Of a stretch of DNA of 64,000 nucleotides, positions 6,566 through 15,345 are shown in pieces. Position numbers and translations under genes: made by a program. Every line of letters starts with the position of its first letter. Within the stretch, counting starts at the first letter, position 1. Origin of the DNA: Diplonema japonicum (Eukaryota > Protista > Euglenozoa: Diplonemea); assembly GCA_964019335.1 (NCBI GenBank), contig OZ025672.1, positions 186,001 to 250,000 on the forward strand. Reading direction: 5' to 3'. The notes below the pieces were generated by a model. It was not told where the DNA came from. It worked only from the letters and a program-made list of their open reading frames with translations, and did not search any database.

Positions 6566-7391
6566 TCAACAAGCTTCTTCCTTCAGCGTGTCCGCGACGA
6601 TTTTTCGTAATGCTGGGGGGTTTTTTTTTTAATTTTTCTTTTTTATTCCCCTTCTTAAGAACGATATACCTACACAAGAACTCACACATAAATTGATGGC
6701 TTTTTCAGTCTGCTCTGGAGGGGTGGTCCCGGTTTGCGAAATGGAGAGGATTGAACCCCGCTGGGGGAAACTGTAAAAAAAAAAAAAAAAAAAAAAAAAA
6801 TGGTAAAAACCACGAAAAAAAACAACATTAAAAACCATACCATGTTACGGTAATGACTGCTGACGACGACCGGATTTCAGAAGGGGTCGGGGTGACCAAG
6901 AGTTCACCTCCAGGCGAGAGGCATACGGAGGCGGCTATGGGCAGCTCGTGAAGTTCTATCCCGGCGTCAGTGAGCGCCAAGGAGGCAGCCATGACTGCCA
7001 AAGGGTATTCGCTGCCAGATAGGGTACGTTCTAAGACAAGAAAGTTTATTTCTATCAGACTTTTGGGGTATTTGTCCTTCAGCACTGCGCCGTTCAACGT
7101 CTCGGAAAGCGCGGACGAGGTATGCCTGTCTCCGGTAGAAGGGTTCCTCTCTTGCCTTTTATCCCGTCTTTCTTCCTCTGCAAATGAGGCCACGTTGTAA
7201 GACACCTTAACGCTGGCTCTCTCTTCGAAATCTCCCACTATCTGCTTCGGGCCGAACACGCTGCATACAATCTTACACCCGTTGTACTCAACATAAGCGG
7301 ATCCTTGGGCATTTCCTAGAATGCCCACTCTGCAGCATGGTGCGTATGTCTCTTCTGGTAGCCTGTTGTCTTCTCGTTTTTTCACTGACAT
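6566..7391 (-). CDS. RNA exosome RNase PH-like subunit (MTR3/RRP41 family), ~232 aa
   Basis: Start MSVKKREDNR. GSAYVE..KIVCSVFGP, YPKSLIEINFLVLE and AASLALTDAGI motifs. Predicted introns 6771-6840 (70 nt) and 6613-6669 (57 nt) add the missing C-terminus ...VTCFPQRGSILSISQTG...AINLCVSSCVALRKIVADTLKEEAC*. Confidence 0.85.
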
Positions 7392-7797
7392 TTTTTTTTT
7401 TTTTTTTTTTTGCCCTTTTTTTGTGTGGTATTTATTTGGGGGGATGGGGAACTTGAATGACCTTTTTTTCTTCTTCCCCTCCCCCCCCCCCTTTTTAGTA
7501 GTCATCGTCGATCTTTTTTCCAAACCGTCCGTTTGCACCATATTTCCCATTTTTCGTGTCGATCTCCCGCCCCTTCATACTGCTCCTTCCAATCGATATT
7601 ACGGCGTAAGCGCTTAGCACGCCAAGGAACGCACCTTTTTTTGTTTTGTTTTGTTTTTTGCTTGTATACCAAAGAGATGTTTTCTCCTCCGAACTGTCTT
7701 GTCCGGTCGCAGCTGGAAATTACTTTTTCCTGCCATTTTTTTTTTTTTTTTTTCCCTCCGCCTTCTTTTTTTAATTCCTTTTTTTTTTTTTCTTCCC

Positions 7798-8217: not shown

Positions 8218-9000
8218 TTACCAGTTGTTGGTGCCGAAGTACCTGTCGCCAAAATCACCCAACCCCGGCAGGATGTAATGACGCTCATCAAGCACAGGAT
8301 CGACTGAAGAAGTGACGATCTGGGTCTTGGGGAACGCAGTGGTGAAATTCTTGAGACCCTCCGGGCAGCAGACAACATTTACGAACACAATGCGCTCCTC
8401 CTTCACGCCGTGCTGCTTGAGGATGTTAACTGCTTTGATGGCCGACCCCCCTGTGGCAAGCATAGGGTCAAGAAGGAACACCCACCTGTCTTTGATGTCA
8501 GCAGGAAGCTTTGCATAGGAGTACTTGCTGTCTGGCTTCCCTGTTTCTTCGTTTCTTTGAATGAGGATTTTCCCAATACGGACGTCTCTGCAGGTTGTTC
8601 TCAAGGCTGCCTCCATGGACTCACCTGCTCTCATGATGGAAACACCGCATATTTTGGCTGTGAAGCCAAGACCGTCGTATTTTTCGTTGGTGGGGGTGAC
8701 GACTTCGCTCCTTTTGAAGGGTACGAAGCTGAGTGCTTCTTCGATGAGCACTCTCATGAGCCTGTCGGAAAAGAACACGAAGTCCTGTCTGCTTGTGTTC
8801 TTGTCTCTGATGATGGTGTGGATCGCCTTCATCTGGGCTGTCATTGAGAGGACGTGAACGGTCGGGATCTTGTTCCATTCGTTGTTGTTGCCTTTCTTCT
8901 CCAGCGCGCTGGCCGTCCCAGCCCAGAACGACCCCGCCACTACACCAGCCCCCAACCCTGCCCCGCCGAGCACAGCCCTCTTCAAAACAGTTCGGAACAT
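8218..9000 (-). CDS. UPRT: Uracil phosphoribosyltransferase with an N-terminal targeting-like extension
   Basis: HTIIRD..T.R.DFVFFSDRL, SIMRAGESM, GKILIQR, PRPP-binding LLDPMLATGGS and the terminal YILPGLGDFGDRYFGT. Confidence 0.95.
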   Translation of the reverse strand: MFRTVLKRAVLGGAGLGAGVVAGSFWAGTASALEKKGNNNEWNKIPTVHVLSMTAQMKAIHTIIRDKNTSRQDFVFFSDRLMRVLIEEALSFVPFKRSEVVTPTNEKYDGLGFTAKICGVSIMRAGESMEAALRTTCRDVRIGKILIQRNEETGKPDSKYSYAKLPADIKDRWVFLLDPMLATGGSAIKAVNILKQHGVKEERIVFVNVVCCPEGLKNFTTAFPKTQIVTSSVDPVLDERHYILPGLGDFGDRYFGTNNW

Positions 9001-10006: not shown

Positions 10007-13000
10007 TCAAGCATTGACGAGAAGAGGTGCAGTGTGACTTCCGGAACTGGCAGCAGGCATCGTCCCACGTTGAGCTGTTGTTTCTTTCTTTCTTTTCACC
10101 CCTTCTTTCATACCTGGTATCCCTGGACGGACCGTCGGCGAGAGCAGTGGGGGATCAGACGAGAAAGCTTCATCTAATGCCGTTTTCACATTCGTACCTC
10201 TCAGTGCAGCTGTTGTTTTAATAGACCTGATCTTTTTGTAAATCTTCTCCCAGTACTTACGAGCCCTTGCGGACGCACTGGAAGGGTCTTCCACCACAAT
10301 GACATGCACCTCATCTTCACGAACCTCACCCTGCCCTGTTCCAAACCACTGTGACTTGTCCTCTTCAGTGGTTTCCTTTTGCCACGTGTGTGTCTGGAGG
10401 TAGGCCTCATGGCAGTCCACAGGCAGCAAGCATGGTGCATGCACCACCTCTAAATCAGTCATTTTCGCGTCTTTGCTCTGGTTTGTTGCGTCCCTCATCA
10501 TCCCCGACACCAGAACATGGTAGCAACCATGTGCCAGTTGTACCTTTTTGTCCTCAGGCCTGTGCAATTGAAGCTCAAAGAGCTTCCCTTTGTTCACGAA
10601 CTTCCTCACTTCCCGTGGCACCCATTTGCTGTACGGCTCCTTTCCTCTCAACAGTTTGTAAGCCAAGTCCACGCCTGCAGCCCGCCACAGCGCTTTCGAG
10701 AAGGCCTCGTTCCCCTTGTCGGCCATCAGTTTAAGAATGGAATCCGATTTGAATGTCAATGCCTGGAGGTCCGTCTCTGCGTACACATCACAGTACTTCG
10801 TGGTTCCTGTCAGGGCGGACAAAAGCCCTGCAGCGTACCCTGGGCCAACGTAGTCGAACCTCCTGTTGACGTGAACCCTTGCAGAGCCGGCTGTGATCAG
10901 GATGATGTTGCCGTGTTCGTCGCCCTTCTCGATCAACAGCTGCCCACGGTGGTAGGTCCTGAGCTTCCTCTTGCTCTTCAAGTGGTCCTTGACCTCTGTT
11001 GAGGCTTGTGTGTACCATTCCATCTGCGACAGGATGTAGTCGGGATTGCACATTTGCATCTTGGCTCCCACGTGGGTCAGCTTCTTCATCTTTCTCTCGA
11101 CAAGCGAAACGAGAACGTCAGCCTCCTTGTCTTCGATAAGCCCCTCCTTCTGCCAGTCCCAGATCTTCGTCCTCGCATGGTTCAGCACAGTGCGTGCTGC
11201 AAGCGTGGTCTTCATTGCGATCGACGTTTGCGATGCCTTCCCTGCGAAAACGACCAGCTGAGCAAGCACCTCACGTTTTACTTGCTTCGCGTGTGTCTTC
11301 AGCTTGTTGGCTTCACCTGTGTTGGCGGTGTTGTGATGCCCACAGTGTGCATACCTGGGTCAGCGATGTTGTCGATCTTCGCAAGAACCGCGTCGTGAGC
11401 AATGACAAGCGCCATCGCCACGTTGAACCCGTAGGTCCACTTCTCCTCTCTGTAGCTCACCTTCGCACCGATCTTGTACACCGTGTCCATGACCTCCTCG
11501 AACTTCCCGTACAGACCATTGTCGAAGTGCCAGAACTGCTCTAAGATGTTTGCGTTCAGCTGTAAGCGTGAGATGGCTTCCATTACATACCAGAATATCC
11601 TCATCGGGGTTTAGTCTCTCGAGAGACACTTCGCAGGCGCTCTGTGTGTTGCTTTGGTTGTGTCATGAGAGCATACCCCTGGGACGTATATCGTAGAGAT
11701 GATCTCTTGGTTCTCAAGAGTGCGGTTCGTTTCGTCGAGGATAAGCTTCTGCTGGTCGATAGGGATGTTCTCCTCGCTGTGGATCTTCGACTTCAGCTTC
11801 AGGACGTTCCCTGTGGGGTCCATCGAGATGATGACGTTCCTGCCCTTCGAGATGTAGTTCACGGTGACCTTCACTCGCTCGAATGTTTCCTTCGCGACCA
11901 TCGTGGTAGGTGAGGACACACCCATGGCCATTGGCATTGCGATGTAAGAGTCGGATGCTTGGAAAGGACCGGACTCTTGGTGGTCTTGTTCTTTTCTCTT
12001 GGCGAGCTTCTCTCTCTCGTTGATCTTCGCCAACAGGAACCGGACGGCATCGCCGTCCAAAAGACCTTCCTCGTTTTGGTCCCACACAGAAGAGTGCATG
12101 ATTTTGAAGTAGTGCATGATAGCCTCCGAGTGAGGGTCTCCTTCGCCTAAGAACTCGTCGTCGTTGTTATAAGGGTCCGCCATGTCTTCGAATACCCACT
12201 TCTTCGCCTCCAGCCAGTTGACGTCGTACAAGGCTGACTCTGTCTTGAGGTCCTCCAGCTGGTCAAGGCCTCCTTCGCGAAGACGTTTGAAGTTCTCCTT
12301 CATCATACGCTTTTTGATATCAGAGACCTGGTCGAGTTTGAACTTCTTCACCACCAATGCCGTGGACACACCGTTGACCAGCAGCGTCAGAACCACAATG
12401 CCGGCGACGAAGAACACAAGTTTTGTCTGGAGGATCGTCCTCGGGTCATCTGGGTTCCTCATCGACAGTCTGTTGTCGCCTGCAACAATGAGCGCCAGAG
12501 CTAGACCTACCGCACCGCGCAGTCCGCCCCATGCGACAAGTACCATCATCCCGGAGTTCAGCTTGTACTCGAAACGGTTGAATATAAGAGAGAGAAGCAT
12601 CACGACAAACACCCTGATGATGTTGATGGCAAGGTACGTTACAATCAGGTACGCGAAGTCTTCGAACTTAACGTGGGCGAAGGCCTTGCCAGCGATGATC
12701 ATGCCCGCCATTGTGAAGATCAGCGTGTTGCCCAGATACACCGACATCTCCCAGAACTCATGCAGTGTGTGGTGCACCTCAGGGGAGATGCACTGCTTTC
12801 TGTGAGACATGTAAATACCACACACCACGAGTGCCAGCACACCTGACACGTGGAAGTACGCCTCTGCGACGAAGAATGTAACGTAAGCAGTCACAAGCGA
12901 GGTGGTGATCTCGATGAGGGGGTCGTTGAAAACCTTCGAGAGGCAGGCCACTGAGATCATGCCCATTACGTACCCAAGGACGGCACCTCCTAGGGCCACC

Positions 13001-14787
13001 TTGAACAGCTCTTTGATAAGTTCCCCGACACTGTCCTCGATGTGGCCAGAGCAGCCTGCAACCGCTGCTTGCAGCACGGTGAAGAAGACAATGGCAGTTC
13101 CGTCGTTCAGAAGGGACTCACCTTCGATCAATGTTGATATCTGTGCCGAGGCACCAAGCTCCTTCAGTAGCGCCACCACTGCCACAGGGTCCGTCGCACT
13201 TAGTGTGACACCAAACAGCAGCGACGCCTCCCACGACCAGTCGTAGGCACCGAAGACGAACTTCGCCACCAACGCTGTCAAGAAGGATGCAATGCAGATA
13301 CCTGGCCCCGCCAAGAGGACGCAATGCGCAAGCACTGTCTTGAACACAAACCAATCGACAGCGTAGGCGGACTCGAAGATCAAGACAGGCAGGAAAATGT
13401 AGAACAGCAAGTGCGGGTCGATGTCAGCAAGCCCCACAAACTTCTTCAAAGTCGAAAAAGCCTCGATCTGCGAAATGCCGTCGAAAGCAGCACCCGCCAT
13501 GAAAAGCATGACAGTGTAGGGGATACGGCTGTCTGAGAAGTTGTGCCTGAAGAAAGCACCTAAAGCACCGATAACAAAGATGACGAGGATGTTGTACGGT
13601 GGCGGGTGCTCGCTGTGGTCCGCGCTATGAGAGGTGGTCTTGGCACCGCACTTCTTGGTGTGCGTGTCGTAGTGGCATGTTGTCTTCGCCTCGCATTCCT
13701 CTTCGTTGTACTTAGCGCATTCAGCTGACGCGCAGGTGCTCTTTGTTTCTTCCCATTTGCACGTTGCAAGGTTCTCACATGCGGTCATGCCCTGGCCTGA
13801 GCACTCGGAGATGTACTCATCGTGTTTTTCATGGCAGCCAGACTCCTTCCAGTCGCACCCAAACTGCCCGTTCAGCAAACAGTCGGAGATGAGAAGAACT
13901 GTGCAGTCCTGATCACCGGACGACTCGCATTTATCGATGTTCCACTTGCAGCCTTCGACGCAGAGGGATTCAGAGGCAATCTTGTCACAAGCGGGGTTCG
14001 TGCAGAGGCTCTTGTCCTGCCAATGGCAATCGGTGGGGAAAAGCTCGCATGACTCCTTCTCGTCGTGGTTCGTGCAGTTCAGCTTGCCCAGCGAGCACGT
14101 GCCGTAGCTCCAAGCGCATGTCGTGACGACGGTGCAGTCGGCCTCCGTGTGAATGGGAGAGCAGGAGACGGCGTCGCATTCTGCGCTTGTTGTGTTAAAT
14201 TCGCATTCGTGGAGAGCGCCGCACTCTGTCACAGTCTTCCCTTTGCAATCCGGTTTTGTCGCATGACTGTTTTCAATGCATTTCTCGTTGGTAGTCCAGT
14301 GGCACTCACCGGAAGTGGAGTGGCATGATGTTTTGTTCTGGGCGCCGCAGTCGGTGCAGACACCCTCATGCCACACGCAGCCCTTGCTGCGGATTGTAAG
14401 GCAGTTTTTTTCAGTGGTTTGCTTCTCGCATCCTGGAGGGGGTGGTTTTGTAATGCACTTTGCGTCCTCTTCTTCCCATAGACACGCTTCGAACTTCTTA
14501 CATTCGTCCTTTTCGGTTTTCTCCTTGCACCCGACGCTGGAGCACGTCTTCTTCACAATGTCCCATGAGCAGTCATGGACGCAGTTGACGGCCGAGAGGG
14601 AGGCGCAGTAATCCACTATGGTTTTCTTGGTTGGTTCCCAGGTTCCAGTTTCTTTGCAATACGCCGGCCAACCGTTTGCCGGTTCGGGAAGCAGCCCTCC
14701 GGAAGTTGCCGGGGTAGTCGAACCACCACCACCACTCCCATCAACCCCTGACAGGTAGATCACCAGCAACGGGATCAACCCCAACAT
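10007..14787 (-). CDS. SOS1/SLC9C-type Na+/H+ exchanger (CPA1) with signal peptide, Cys-rich ectodomain, ubiquitin-like domain and cyclic-nucleotide-binding domain (~1558 aa)
   Basis: Exons 14787-11677, 11641-11591, 11559-11355 and 11316-10007. Introns of 35, 31 and 38 nt (GTATG...ACAG) join ORFs 11611-14787, 11299-11604 and 10007-11269 in frame. CPA1 motifs FLPVLIFESA, SATDPVAVV, GESLLNDG and WGGLRGAVGLALAL. CNBD-like YHRGQLLIEKGD..IILITAGSARV..GPG. Confidence 0.9.
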
Positions 14788-15345
14788 TATGTTTCCCCAG
14801 ACCTGAGTTTTTCTTTTTTTTTTTTATATAAAATACGTTGTGGGGGGGAGGTATATGGTACGGGTCGGTTTTTTCTTCTTTCTTTTCTTCTTTCTTTTTT
14901 TTAATAAAAATGTTGTCACTTTTTTTTTTTTTTTTTTTTTTCTCTCTTCATTTCTTCTTTCCCTCCGCGTTATTTGGGGGGGAAAAGAAAGGAAAGAAAA
15001 AGAAGGACAAACAATAATACAAAAAAAAAAAAAAAATAAAACAAAAAAAAAAAAAAACAACAAAACTATATCAAATAAAAAAAAGAATAAAGAACAAAAA
15101 AATGTTCTTTTTCTTTTTCTTCTGACTGGAAAAAGAGAAAAAAAAGGGATTGAAATACACACGCCTCATGGGGTTACAACAAATTAATAAAACAGAAAAA
15201 AAAAAAAGAAGAGAAATTGAACTATGTTAAGAGAAGGTTAGGTGCCTCCTCCCCCCGACCACCATCACAAAAAAAAAAAATGAATGAAAACTGATTATCG
15301 ATAAAAGAAAATCTAAAATAAATAAAAAAAAATTTTTTTTCTCCT

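What the first reader, a model, noticed from the sequence alone, without database searches (positions are those of the whole stretch)
11591..11874. Ubiquitin-like domain sits where SLC9C1 has its voltage sensor in a SOS1/SLC9C-type Na+/H+ exchanger
Seen: after the CPA1 domain comes the helix SVWDQNEEGLLDGDAVRFL. Then follows VKVTVNYISKGRNVIISMDPTGNVLKLKSKIHSEENIPIDQQKLILDETNRTLENQEIISTIYVPG|SACEVSL, which parallels ubiquitin ([25 protein letters not shown]..TLSDY) and is completed only after splicing. Next come WTYGFNVA...MKTTLAARTVLNH...EGLIEDKEA...VERKMKKL and a CNBD. Established: sperm SLC9C1 carries a voltage-sensing domain between these same cytosolic helices, and plant SOS1 has no such insert. 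Inference: the same regulatory slot holds a Ubl module with no GG tail, so a protein-interaction input may replace voltage gating. I know of no described exchanger with this architecture.
Basis: partly seen in the sequence, partly recalled or inferred. Interest (0 to 1): 0.85.

Follow-up and report, generated by a model that had tools for sequence, protein, structure and literature searches.

The report
Ubiquitin-fold insert in diplonemid Na+/H+ exchanger
A diplonemid protist gene encodes a sodium/proton exchanger whose cytosolic regulatory helix bundle carries a built-in, non-cleavable ubiquitin-like domain in the same inter-helix connection where animal sperm SLC9C1 carries its voltage sensor, so this connection has taken up different add-on modules independently.

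Summary
On the minus strand, 14787..10007, lies one trans-spliced gene.

Domain order: signal peptide, Cys-rich ectodomain, CPA1 transporter, cytosolic helices ICH1-4, flexible linker, ubiquitin-like domain (Ubl), then four more helices and a CNBD.

- **Ubl:** it passes Pfam's ubiquitin threshold. An orthologue folds as a beta-grasp that superposes on ubiquitin (33-36% identity, 1.5-1.8 A).
- **What the Ubl lacks:** the GG tail (N-P instead) and the L8/I44/H68/V70 recognition patch.
- **Slot:** two anchor motifs are conserved from bacteria-like homologues to animals. Between them lie 47-51 residues in plain forms, 42-89 in diplonemid paralogues, 159-181 in the Ubl group and 193-220 in voltage-sensor forms.
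- **Origin:** a tree puts the Ubl group inside a diplonemid-only expansion that has no voltage sensor. The Ubl is therefore an independent insertion, about 20-25 residues upstream of the voltage-sensor insertion point, not a replacement.
- **Spread:** I found it in eight named diplonemid species and nowhere else, and in no paper.

Function is untested. The CNBD lacks the canonical Glu and Arg. I call it a new variant of a known kind.

The parts
14788..14804 (-). Trans-splice acceptor (AG at 14804-14803) and a 5' UTR of about 15 nt before the ATG at 14787
   Evidence: The X2 contig carries loose letters beyond 14803 whose reverse complement is the spliced-leader 3' end. That 17-mer occurs 228 times in the genome against 0 for the control. 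Sequence read.
11677..14787 (-). Exon 1 (1037 codons): signal peptide, Cys-rich ectodomain, transporter, ICH1-4, linker, Ubl strands beta1-beta4
   Evidence: ORF; Pfam; joint at 11641>11677
13606..14736 (-). Cys-rich extracellular domain (about aa 18-394; 45 Cys) after a hydrophobic N-terminal signal
   Evidence: No Pfam hit at E<=1. Cys positions are conserved in orthologues.
12343..13563 (-). CPA1 transporter domain (PF00999). It keeps the TM5 Asp (SATDP), the ND motif (LLNDG) and the WGGLRG arginine.
   Evidence: 1e-59. Alignment to sea-urchin SLC9C1 shows D209 and N237-D238 matched. Motif coordinates.
12025..12342 (-). Cytosolic helices ICH1-ICH4 (= SOS1 HC1-HC4), ending in the anchor motif DAVRFLLAK
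   Evidence: phmmer alignment to SLC9C1 native residues up to 621 and to AtSOS1 up to 555; helix names from PMC10620092 and PMC10372031
11875..12024 (-). K/E-rich extension of helix 4 plus a poorly conserved flexible linker of about 40 residues
   Evidence: Variable, gappy columns; no secondary structure and pLDDT <50 in the orthologue model
11677..11874 (-). Ubl domain, strands beta1-beta2, helix alpha1, strands beta3-beta4 and a 3-10 turn
   Evidence: PF00240 above cut-off; orthologue model; Foldseek top hits are ubiquitin
11642..11676 (-). Intron 1 (35 nt, GTATGC..ACAG), inside the Ubl
   Evidence: Joint in X1 and X2. Gene calls in other diplonemid genomes stop at the same 'PG' site.
11591..11641 (-). 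Exon 2 (17 codons): Ubl strand beta5 (CEVSLER), then N-P in place of GG and the start of the conserved NPDEDIL element
11560..11590 (-). Intron 2 (31 nt, GTATGT..ACAG)
   Evidence: Joint in X2
11355..11559 (-). Exon 3. 11440-11559 is the rest of the ancestral HC4-HC5 connecting element. 11355-11439 is helix HC5 (WTYGFNVAMAL...), the counterpart of the soluble S4 extension of SLC9C1.
   Evidence: Alignment to SLC9C1 native 833 onward; homology of the post-Ubl segment to the 47-51-residue connection of plain forms
11317..11354 (-). Intron 3 (38 nt, GTATGC..ACAG), phase 1
   Evidence: Joint in X1 and X2 ('cut +2')
10114..11316 (-). Exon 4. Helices HC6-HC8 (= ICH5-7) at 11075-11316; CNBD-like domain at 10718-10960 with its phosphate-binding cassette at 10778-10831; beta-rich C-terminal region; conserved basic helix at 10196-10264.
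10075..10113 (-).
   Evidence: Joint in X1; sequence. Orthologues lack these 13 residues, and the D. ambulator protein is 1545 aa.
10007..10074 (-). Exon 5: C-terminal tail ending ..APLLVNA, and the stop codon (10007-10009)
   Evidence: the ..PLL.. end is conserved in orthologues

Best explanation
[quoted passage not shown] It is an electroneutral-type CPA1 Na+/H+ exchanger of the CNBD-bearing SOS1/SLC9C kind. It belongs to a single orthogroup found so far only in diplonemids.

In that orthogroup, about 120-130 residues were inserted directly after cytosolic helix 4. The insert is a K/E-rich helix extension, a flexible linker of about 40 residues, and one ubiquitin-fold domain. The insert lies ahead of the ancestral connection of about 48 residues that leads to helix 5. 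The Ubl cannot be cleaved or conjugated, because its tail reads L-E-R-L-N-P instead of L-R-L-R-G-G. It is tied flexibly on its N side. Through strand beta5 and the conserved NPDED element it is tied directly to the helix that corresponds to the soluble S4 stem of SLC9C1.

**Inferred.** In SLC9C1 and SOS1 this helix bundle clamps the transporter in an autoinhibited state. The stem helix is what passes sensor movement to the inhibitory helix (ICH7/HC8). The Ubl is therefore placed to act as a cytosolic regulatory or docking appendage on that clamp. It could work by docking within the protein or by binding a lineage-specific partner. It probably does not use classical UIM/UBA-type ubiquitin receptors.

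The CNBD is probably CNBD-like, as in SOS1, rather than a canonical cAMP sensor.
For: - **Gene structure and expression:** spliced joints and spliced-leader letters in RNA-like contigs, with DNA runs unspliced; spliced-leader 17-mer 228 times versus 0 in the control; colinear transcript-derived orthologues.
- **Domains:**
- **Fold:** AF2 model of the orthologue segment L001:1969-2256, pLDDT 80.6, order beta-beta-alpha-beta-beta-3_10-beta. Foldseek top hits are ubiquitin, 33-36% identity, rmsd 1.5-1.8 A, target TM-score 0.85-0.92.
- **Tail and surface:** G75-G76 are N-P in every member. L8, I44, H68 and V70 are replaced. K27, I36 and the IPxDQQ loop are kept.
- **Slot by pairwise alignment:** against sea-urchin SLC9C1, the D. 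papillatum orthologue aligns at 382-863 to native 65-537, at 864-915 to 568-621 (ICH3-4; weak, 0.3 bits, E about 8e2 on its own) and at 1085-1276 to 833-1025. The voltage-sensor residues N691-K815 fall in the unaligned gap.
- **Slot by anchor count:** 47-51 residues in plain forms, 42-89 in paralogues, 159-181 in the Ubl group, and 193-220 with 2-4 hydrophobic segments in voltage-sensor forms.
- **Insert position:** own-genome paralogues lack the insert. The post-Ubl segment is homologous to the ancestral connection.
- **Mechanism of the helix clamp:** PMC10620092 and PMC10372031.
Against: - No experiment and no usable whole-protein model exists. The 1131-aa AF2 model had pLDDT 45.5, so the position of the Ubl relative to the transporter or the inhibitory helix is unknown.
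- The Ubl is the fastest-evolving folded part: 33-66% identity among orthologues against 67-84% overall.
- Its invariant residues are mostly fold-determining ones, which fits a passive scaffold as well as a regulator.
- The insertion point is not the one used by the voltage sensor, so the mechanical coupling need not be analogous.
Confidence: 0.5

Rival explanations
1. Passive structural insert. The Ubl is a stable, inert spacer or an extra dimer contact in the helical bundle. It carries no signal, and regulation runs only through the C-terminal region as in SOS1.
For: - The surface residues of the Ubl drift, while the conserved ones (K27, I30, I36, P37, Q40-41, L71 equivalents) are fold-determining.
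- The Ubl evolves faster than the rest of the protein.
- The conserved basic C-terminal helix is shared with paralogues that lack the Ubl.
Against: - The insert has been kept with its fold intact across eight named species, spanning Diplonema, Rhynchopus and Sulcionema and the hemistasiid genera, with a long stem and short internal branches.
- An acidic E-E-N motif and the NPDED junction are invariant.
- The insert sits next to the stem helix of the regulatory clamp.
Confidence: 0.3
2. Built-in ubiquitin mimic for trafficking or turnover. The Ubl acts in cis like a permanent mono-ubiquitin signal. It would direct the exchanger to endosomal/ESCRT sorting or recruit proteasome or shuttle factors.
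For: - The domain is closer to ubiquitin itself (33-36% identity) than to NEDD8 or other Ubls.
- From my own knowledge, in-frame ubiquitin fusions can drive sorting of membrane proteins.
Against: - The L8/I44/H68/V70 patch used by most ubiquitin receptors is not conserved. Position 44 is I, S, L, R, F, Q or T, and position 8 is S, A, G or D.
- The domain is internal, not terminal.
- A constitutive degradation signal on a conserved transporter seems costly.
Confidence: 0.1
3. Artefact: separate neighbouring genes, a pseudogene, or a chance ubiquitin-like ORF read together by mistake.
For: Only that the Pfam ubiquitin match is partial (positions 5-44 of 72) and close to threshold on the genomic exon.
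Against: - Spliced contigs join the exons.
- Full-length transcript-derived orthologues exist in eight named species.
- The partial match is explained by the intron before strand beta5.
- The fold search is unambiguous.
Confidence: 0.02

Closest known systems
SLC9C1 / sNHE (sperm-specific, voltage- and cAMP-gated Na+/H+ exchanger; e.g. PDB 8OTQ, 8PCZ, 8U6Z)
   Same: It is the best solved-structure match (E about 1e-119). It shares the 13-TM CPA1 unit with the ND motif, helices ICH1-4, the stem helix plus ICH5-7, the CNBD and the region after it. In both proteins a foreign module occupies the connection between ICH4 and the stem helix.
   Different: - The module here is a soluble ubiquitin fold, not a membrane S1-S4 voltage sensor. 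There are no hydrophobic segments and no RxxR ladder.
- The insertion point is about 20-25 residues upstream.
- The origin is independent, in a diplonemid clade.
- The CNBD lacks the Glu and Arg of the phosphate-binding cassette.
- This protein also has a large Cys-rich ectodomain.
SOS1 / NHX7 of plants (PDB 7Y3E, 8IWO) and the VSD-less CNBD-bearing exchangers of protists and bacteria
   Same: Transporter, eight-helix alpha-CTD, CNBD-like domain and beta-rich domain. The cyclic-nucleotide site is non-canonical. The own-genome paralogues L008 and L009 have exactly this plain architecture.
   Different: In plain forms HC4-HC5 is a short connection: 47-51 residues in the bacteria-like and protist forms counted, and described as short loops in SOS1. 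Here it holds a linker plus a Ubl, 159-181 residues in all. No SOS2-type C-terminal tail was examined.
Integral (type-2) ubiquitin-like domain proteins, and ubiquitin itself
   Same: Beta-grasp fold with 33-36% identity to ubiquitin. K27, I36 and the IPxDQQ loop are conserved. There is no processing site, as in integral Ubl domains.
   Different: The domain is embedded in the middle of a transporter's regulatory helix bundle, and the canonical hydrophobic recognition patch is lost. I know of no other CPA exchanger with a Ubl, and paper searches found none.

Membership tests
CPA1 Na+/H+ exchangers (Pfam PF00999) | Match to the transporter profile above the curated threshold | tested here: met
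   202.8 bits against a cut-off of 26.2, covering profile 9-375/375
CPA1 Na+/H+ exchangers (Pfam PF00999) | Ion-site residues of electroneutral NHEs: TM5 Asp, the ND motif in TM6, and a conserved Arg | tested here: met
   SATDP, LLNDG and WGGLRG are present. In the orthologue, D209 and N237-D238 of sea-urchin SLC9C1 are aligned. Transport itself was not tested.
SOS1/SLC9C-type (CNBD-bearing) exchangers | Helical alpha-CTD (HC1-HC8 / ICH1-7) followed by a CNBD fold | tested here: met
   Sequence alignment to SLC9C1 and SOS1 through the helices and the CNBD; PF00027 at 34.3 bits against 27.5
SLC9C1 (sNHE) proper | S1-S4 voltage-sensing domain with an S4 charge ladder between ICH4 and the stem helix | tested here: not met
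   The slot has 0 hydrophobic 19-mers and no PF00520, whereas voltage-sensor forms have 2-4 hydrophobic segments and RxxRxxR motifs. The protein lies outside the holozoan voltage-sensor clade.
SLC9C1 (sNHE) proper | Canonical cyclic-nucleotide contacts (Glu and Arg of the phosphate-binding cassette) | tested here: not met
   Glu is replaced by Leu and Arg by Lys, both against SLC9C1 and against PKA RI-alpha. The substitutions are conserved in orthologues. Binding itself was not tested.
Ubiquitin family (PF00240), beta-grasp fold | Profile match and the beta-beta-alpha-beta-beta-beta fold | tested here: met
   28.0 and 32.6 bits against 25.4. The orthologue model superposes on ubiquitin at 1.5-1.8 A. 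The fold was predicted on the orthologue P0010, not on the window's own joined exons.
Conjugatable ubiquitin-like modifiers | C-terminal Gly-Gly exposed by processing | tested here: not met
   The positions of G75-G76 are N-P in all members and the chain continues for more than 500 residues
Ubiquitin-receptor-binding Ubl domains | Conserved L8-I44-H68-V70 hydrophobic patch | tested here: not met
   All four positions are replaced or variable across the family

The most novel reading that the evidence does not exclude
The roughly 48-residue connection between helix 4 and helix 5 of CNBD-type Na+/H+ exchangers is a general socket for sensor modules. Holozoa plugged in a voltage sensor. Diplonemids plugged in a ubiquitin fold that binds a specific cytosolic partner, or is switched by modification. 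That would gate exchange through the same helical clamp and give a protein-gated secondary transporter.
Probability: 0.22. Interest if true: 0.8.

Novelty: new variant of a known kind. Interest (0 to 1): 0.6.

Why it matters
SLC9C1 is described as the only transporter controlled by a voltage-sensing domain. How its helix bundle passes a sensor's movement to the transport unit is still being worked out.

A second, unrelated module in the same connection of the same scaffold shows that this connection tolerates large inserts and has taken them up independently. It also gives a natural comparison set on one scaffold: plain forms, the Ubl form and the voltage-sensor form. That set can be used to test how the clamp is driven.

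The finding also adds a Ubl context (a domain inside a solute carrier) that I could not find described. It concerns diplonemids, which are reported to be abundant in the marine plankton. From my own knowledge, one of them, D. papillatum, can be transformed.

Tried and rejected
- The exons were searched separately by reference. Folding used an intron-free orthologue (L001, the contig that encodes P0010).
- **Whole-protein AF2 model:** 1131 aa of the orthologue with 12 alignment rows gave pLDDT 45.5. It is unusable for domain packing. Only its secondary structure and its Ubl part agree with the small model.
- **ESM Atlas:** a look-up of the slot region gave no usable hit.
- **Exhaustive phmmer search:** the slot piece (ICH3-4, linker and the exon-1 part of the Ubl) found only two 50%-identity clusters of exchangers. 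The other hits in the top 150 matched only the Ubl part, mostly in several stretches. Seven long ones were checked and are polyubiquitins without PF00999. Weaker Ubl-bearing exchangers below rank 150 cannot be excluded.
- **P0164:** this protein (a SAM domain plus an exchanger) looked like another module in the family. The SAM domain is N-terminal in an older D. papillatum gene model, and the protein has no Ubl.
- **C-terminal basic helix:** I tested whether it is specific to the Ubl group. It is not; paralogues share it.
Full report
**1. What is in the sequence**

The finding lies in a minus-strand gene. The 1058-codon ORF 14787..11611 ends just after a GTATGC donor.

I read the sequence and placed the boundaries as follows:
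- exon 1: 14787..11677
- intron 1: 11676..11642 (35 nt)
- exon 2: 11641..11591 (17 codons)
- intron 2: 11590..11560 (31 nt)
- exon 3: 11559..11355 (ends in phase 1)
- intron 3: 11354..11317 (38 nt)
- exon 4: from 11316

The 66 codons from VKVTVNY to IYVPG are 11874..11677.

Every search used the exons separately by reference. Folding used an intron-free orthologue.

**2. Is the gene model real?**

Yes.
- *Homology.* The separately translated exons align colinearly, across all three junctions, with full-length transcript-derived proteins of diplonemids. Examples of the joined readings are ..HVPG-R-PCEVSLNRLNPDEDILLNASILE.. and ..ADPGEANKLK..
- *Conserved intron position.* Gene calls on other diplonemid genome contigs (P0003, P0004) break off at the same 'PG' site, so intron 1 is conserved in position.
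- *Spliced contigs.* Logan contigs of two runs from closely related organisms (X1 and X2; about 1-3% different; guessed to be RNA) carry exactly the joints 11641>11677, 11559>11591 and 11314>11353 (the last with 'cut +2', which equals 11317-11354). Two DNA runs identical to the window (X3, X7) are unspliced.
- *Spliced leader.* X2 also carries loose letters beyond 14803 whose reverse complement is GTTTCTGTACTTTATT. With the next G, that 17-mer occurs 228 times in this genome, against 0 for the reversed control. From my own knowledge it resembles the diplonemid/kinetoplastid spliced-leader 3' end. The mRNA is therefore trans-spliced at the AG at 14804-14803, about 15 nt before the ATG.
It removes 13 residues that orthologues lack. 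The product is then 1545 aa, the length of the D. ambulator orthologue. This intron rests on one contig.

**3. Organism**

The closest proteins are from Diplonema ambulator and D. papillatum. The window's exon pieces are 84-88% identical to the D. ambulator protein.

A paralogue elsewhere in this genome (L008) has zero distance to a Diplonema japonicum transcript over the kept columns. The window is therefore D. japonicum or something very near it.

**4. Domains**

Pfam gives:
- Na_H_Exchanger, 1e-59, aa 409-815.
- ubiquitin, 28.0 bits on the whole exon and 32.6 bits on a 98-aa piece, against a cut-off of 25.4. Only profile positions 5-44 are matched, because strand beta5 lies in exon 2.
- cNMP_binding, 34.3 bits, in exon 4.

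Ahead of the transporter lie a hydrophobic signal and about 380 residues with 45 cysteines and no Pfam match.

The ion-site residues of electroneutral NHEs are kept: SATDP, LLNDG and WGGLRG.

**5. Is the Ubl a beta-grasp?**

I folded residues 640-735 of orthologue P0010 (L001:1969-2256), using an alignment of eight family members.
- Mean pLDDT is 80.6. The element order is beta1, beta2, alpha1, beta3, beta4, a 3-10 turn and beta5.
- The best Foldseek hits in the PDB are ubiquitin chains: 33-36% identity, rmsd 1.5-1.8 A over 72-78 residues, TM-score by target 0.85-0.92.
- phmmer of the D. papillatum protein also hits ubiquitin directly.

In the window, beta5 is the CEVSLER stretch of exon 2.

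Compared with ubiquitin across ten family members:
- K27, I36, the G10 turn, the IPxDQQ loop and L71 are kept.
- L8 (S/A/G/D), I44 (I/S/L/R/F/Q/T), H68 (E/D) and V70 (S/H/Q/T) are not kept.
- G75-G76 are N-P in every member.

The domain is integral and cannot be conjugated. It lacks the patch used by most ubiquitin receptors.

**6. Is it the voltage-sensor slot?**

*Pairwise evidence.* The D. papillatum orthologue matches sea-urchin SLC9C1 best (about 1e-119). Rice SOS1 scores about 1e-86 and Arabidopsis SOS1 about 5e-81. Three stretches align:
- 382-863 to native 65-537;
- 864-915 to native 568-621, which is ICH3-4. This stretch is weak, at 0.3 bits and an E-value of about 8e2 on its own;
- 1085-1276 to native 833-1025.

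I checked the numbering offset on D209 and N237-D238.

The published voltage-sensor residues run from N691 on S1 to K815 on S4. S4 then continues as a long soluble helix embedded between ICH3-4 and ICH5-6 (PMC10620092; PMC10620091). They fall in the unaligned gap. The family's WTYGFNVAMAL helix aligns with the soluble S4 stem. SOS1 has eight helices joined by short loops (PMC10372031).

*Family-wide evidence.* I aligned 50 relatives and counted the residues between two anchors conserved from bacteria-like homologues to animals. The anchors are [DE]AVR.L at the end of helix 4 and [WL]..[GA][FY][DN] at the start of helix 5.

| Group | Residues between anchors | Hydrophobic 19-mers |
|---|---|---|
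| Bacteria-like | 49-51 | 0 |
| VSD-less protists | 47 | 0 |
| Diplonemid paralogues | 42-89 | 0 |
| Ubl group | 159-181 | 0 |
| Voltage-sensor clade | 193-220 | 2-4, with RxxRxxR ladders |

The slot of P0224 (547-743) contains its Pfam Ion_trans hit at 611-727.

Two paralogues in the window's own genome (L008, L009) are PF00999 plus PF00027 without a Ubl. Aligned against them, the Ubl group carries about 120-130 extra residues at this point.

**7. A refinement**

The post-Ubl segment runs from NPDEDIL through ..FW.F..G.YG.. to the anchor W, about 47 residues. It is homologous to the ancestral connection of plain forms. The Ubl with its linker was therefore inserted directly after helix 4, upstream of that element.

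In voltage-sensor forms the ancestral element is split. Its first half precedes S1 and its second half follows S4.

The two modules share the connection, not the exact insertion point.

**8. History**

A quick maximum-likelihood tree (LG+G4, 1039 columns, SH-aLRT support) shows:
- all 30 diplonemid sequences form one clade (support 100);
- the nine Ubl-bearing sequences form one clade within it (support 100), beside four Ubl-less and VSD-less diplonemid subfamilies;
- the holozoan voltage-sensor clade is separate (support 96-98).

The Ubl was therefore gained once, in a VSD-less ancestor. It did not replace a voltage sensor.

Named members are Diplonema ambulator, D. papillatum, Rhynchopus euleeides, R. 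humris, Sulcionema, Namystynia, Artemidia and Hemistasia. There are also marine metagenome and metatranscriptome contigs.

Searches for the architecture elsewhere:
- An exhaustive phmmer search of 1.84 billion representatives with helices 3-4, the linker and the exon-1 part of the Ubl found only two exchanger clusters.
- The other top hits matched only the Ubl part, mostly in several stretches. Seven long ones that I checked are polyubiquitins.
- The Ubl segment has no match in 108 Ubl-less relatives.
- No paper in the held library links a Ubl with SLC9C, SOS1 or NHE exchangers.

**9. How it most likely works**

*Shown.*
- The architecture and the topology: the N side of the Ubl is tethered by a variable linker of about 40 residues.
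- The C side runs directly through beta5 and the invariant NPDED element into the connection to helix 5.

*From the literature.* That helix bundle autoinhibits the transporter in SOS1. In SLC9C1 it passes S4 movement to the inhibitory helix ICH7.

*Inferred.* The Ubl is a cytosolic regulatory or docking appendage acting on this clamp, either within the protein or through a lineage-specific partner. I give this about 0.5.

*Against a specific signalling role.*
- The Ubl evolves about twice as fast as the rest of the protein.
- Its invariant residues are largely fold-determining, so a passive structural insert remains a serious rival (about 0.3).
- A built-in ubiquitin mimic for sorting or turnover is less likely (about 0.1), because the recognition patch is lost.

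*The CNBD.* Against both SLC9C1 and PKA RI-alpha, the Glu of the phosphate-binding cassette is Leu and the Arg is Lys. This is conserved in orthologues.

**10. Limits**

- The whole-protein model was unusable (pLDDT 45.5), and both folding jobs are spent.
- The Ubl fold was predicted on an orthologue about 50% identical in that region, not on the window's own protein.
- The RNA evidence comes from contigs of close relatives, whose RNA nature is inferred from splicing and the spliced-leader letters.
- The tree is a quick search, and the diplonemid subfamilies are an unresolved polytomy.

**11. Verdict**

The feature is real and conserved, and I could not find it described. It is a new variant of the SOS1/SLC9C-type exchanger. 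The slot claim holds with the refinements above. The functional claim is open.

Noticed in passing
window 10075-10113 (minus strand): A fourth, in-frame 39-nt intron (GTATGA..ACAG) in the C-terminal tail. It is supported by one spliced contig and by the gap in orthologues. All four introns are 31-39 nt and start with GTATG.
   Followed up: partly
window 14788-14830; genome-wide: A spliced-leader trans-splice acceptor lies about 15 nt upstream of the ATG. The spliced-leader 3' 17-mer occurs 228 times in the 62.5-Mb genome, partly in close tandem pairs.
   Followed up: partly
P0224 (Chromosphaera perkinsii); P0221 and P0223 (JGI environmental): A full exchanger + voltage sensor (PF00520 at 611-727) + CNBD protein exists in an ichthyosporean, which is a non-animal holozoan. 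PMC6660944 reported voltage-sensor forms only in Metazoa, so the sensor was probably acquired before animals arose.
   Followed up: partly
window 10778-10831: The CNBD phosphate-binding cassette has Leu for the canonical Glu and Lys for the canonical Arg. This is conserved in all orthologues, so the domain is probably CNBD-like, as in SOS1.
   Followed up: partly
G000 contigs C79, C42, C48, C58 (L008-L011); Diplonemids hold a large expansion of SOS1/SLC9C-type exchangers: at least five subfamilies and dozens of transcripts of 1100-1800 aa. In L011 the ORF just downstream of the exchanger ORF has a SHOCT domain, and the related transcript P0166 carries it at its C-terminus.
   Followed up: partly
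window 13606-14736: Extracellular domain of about 380 residues with 45 cysteines in repeated C..W-type modules and no Pfam match. The Cys positions are conserved across the orthogroup.
   Followed up: no
window 10196-10264: A strongly conserved basic amphipathic helix (..KYWEKIYKKIRSIK..) near the C-terminus. It is shared with Ubl-less diplonemid paralogues and could be an autoinhibitory or calmodulin-type binding helix.
   Followed up: partly
window 8218-9000 and 6828-7550 (minus strand): Neighbouring ORFs look like a uracil phosphoribosyltransferase-type protein and an RNase PH/exosome-type protein. The intergenic DNA is rich in A/G and T/C runs. This is judged by eye from the translations only.
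   Followed up: no
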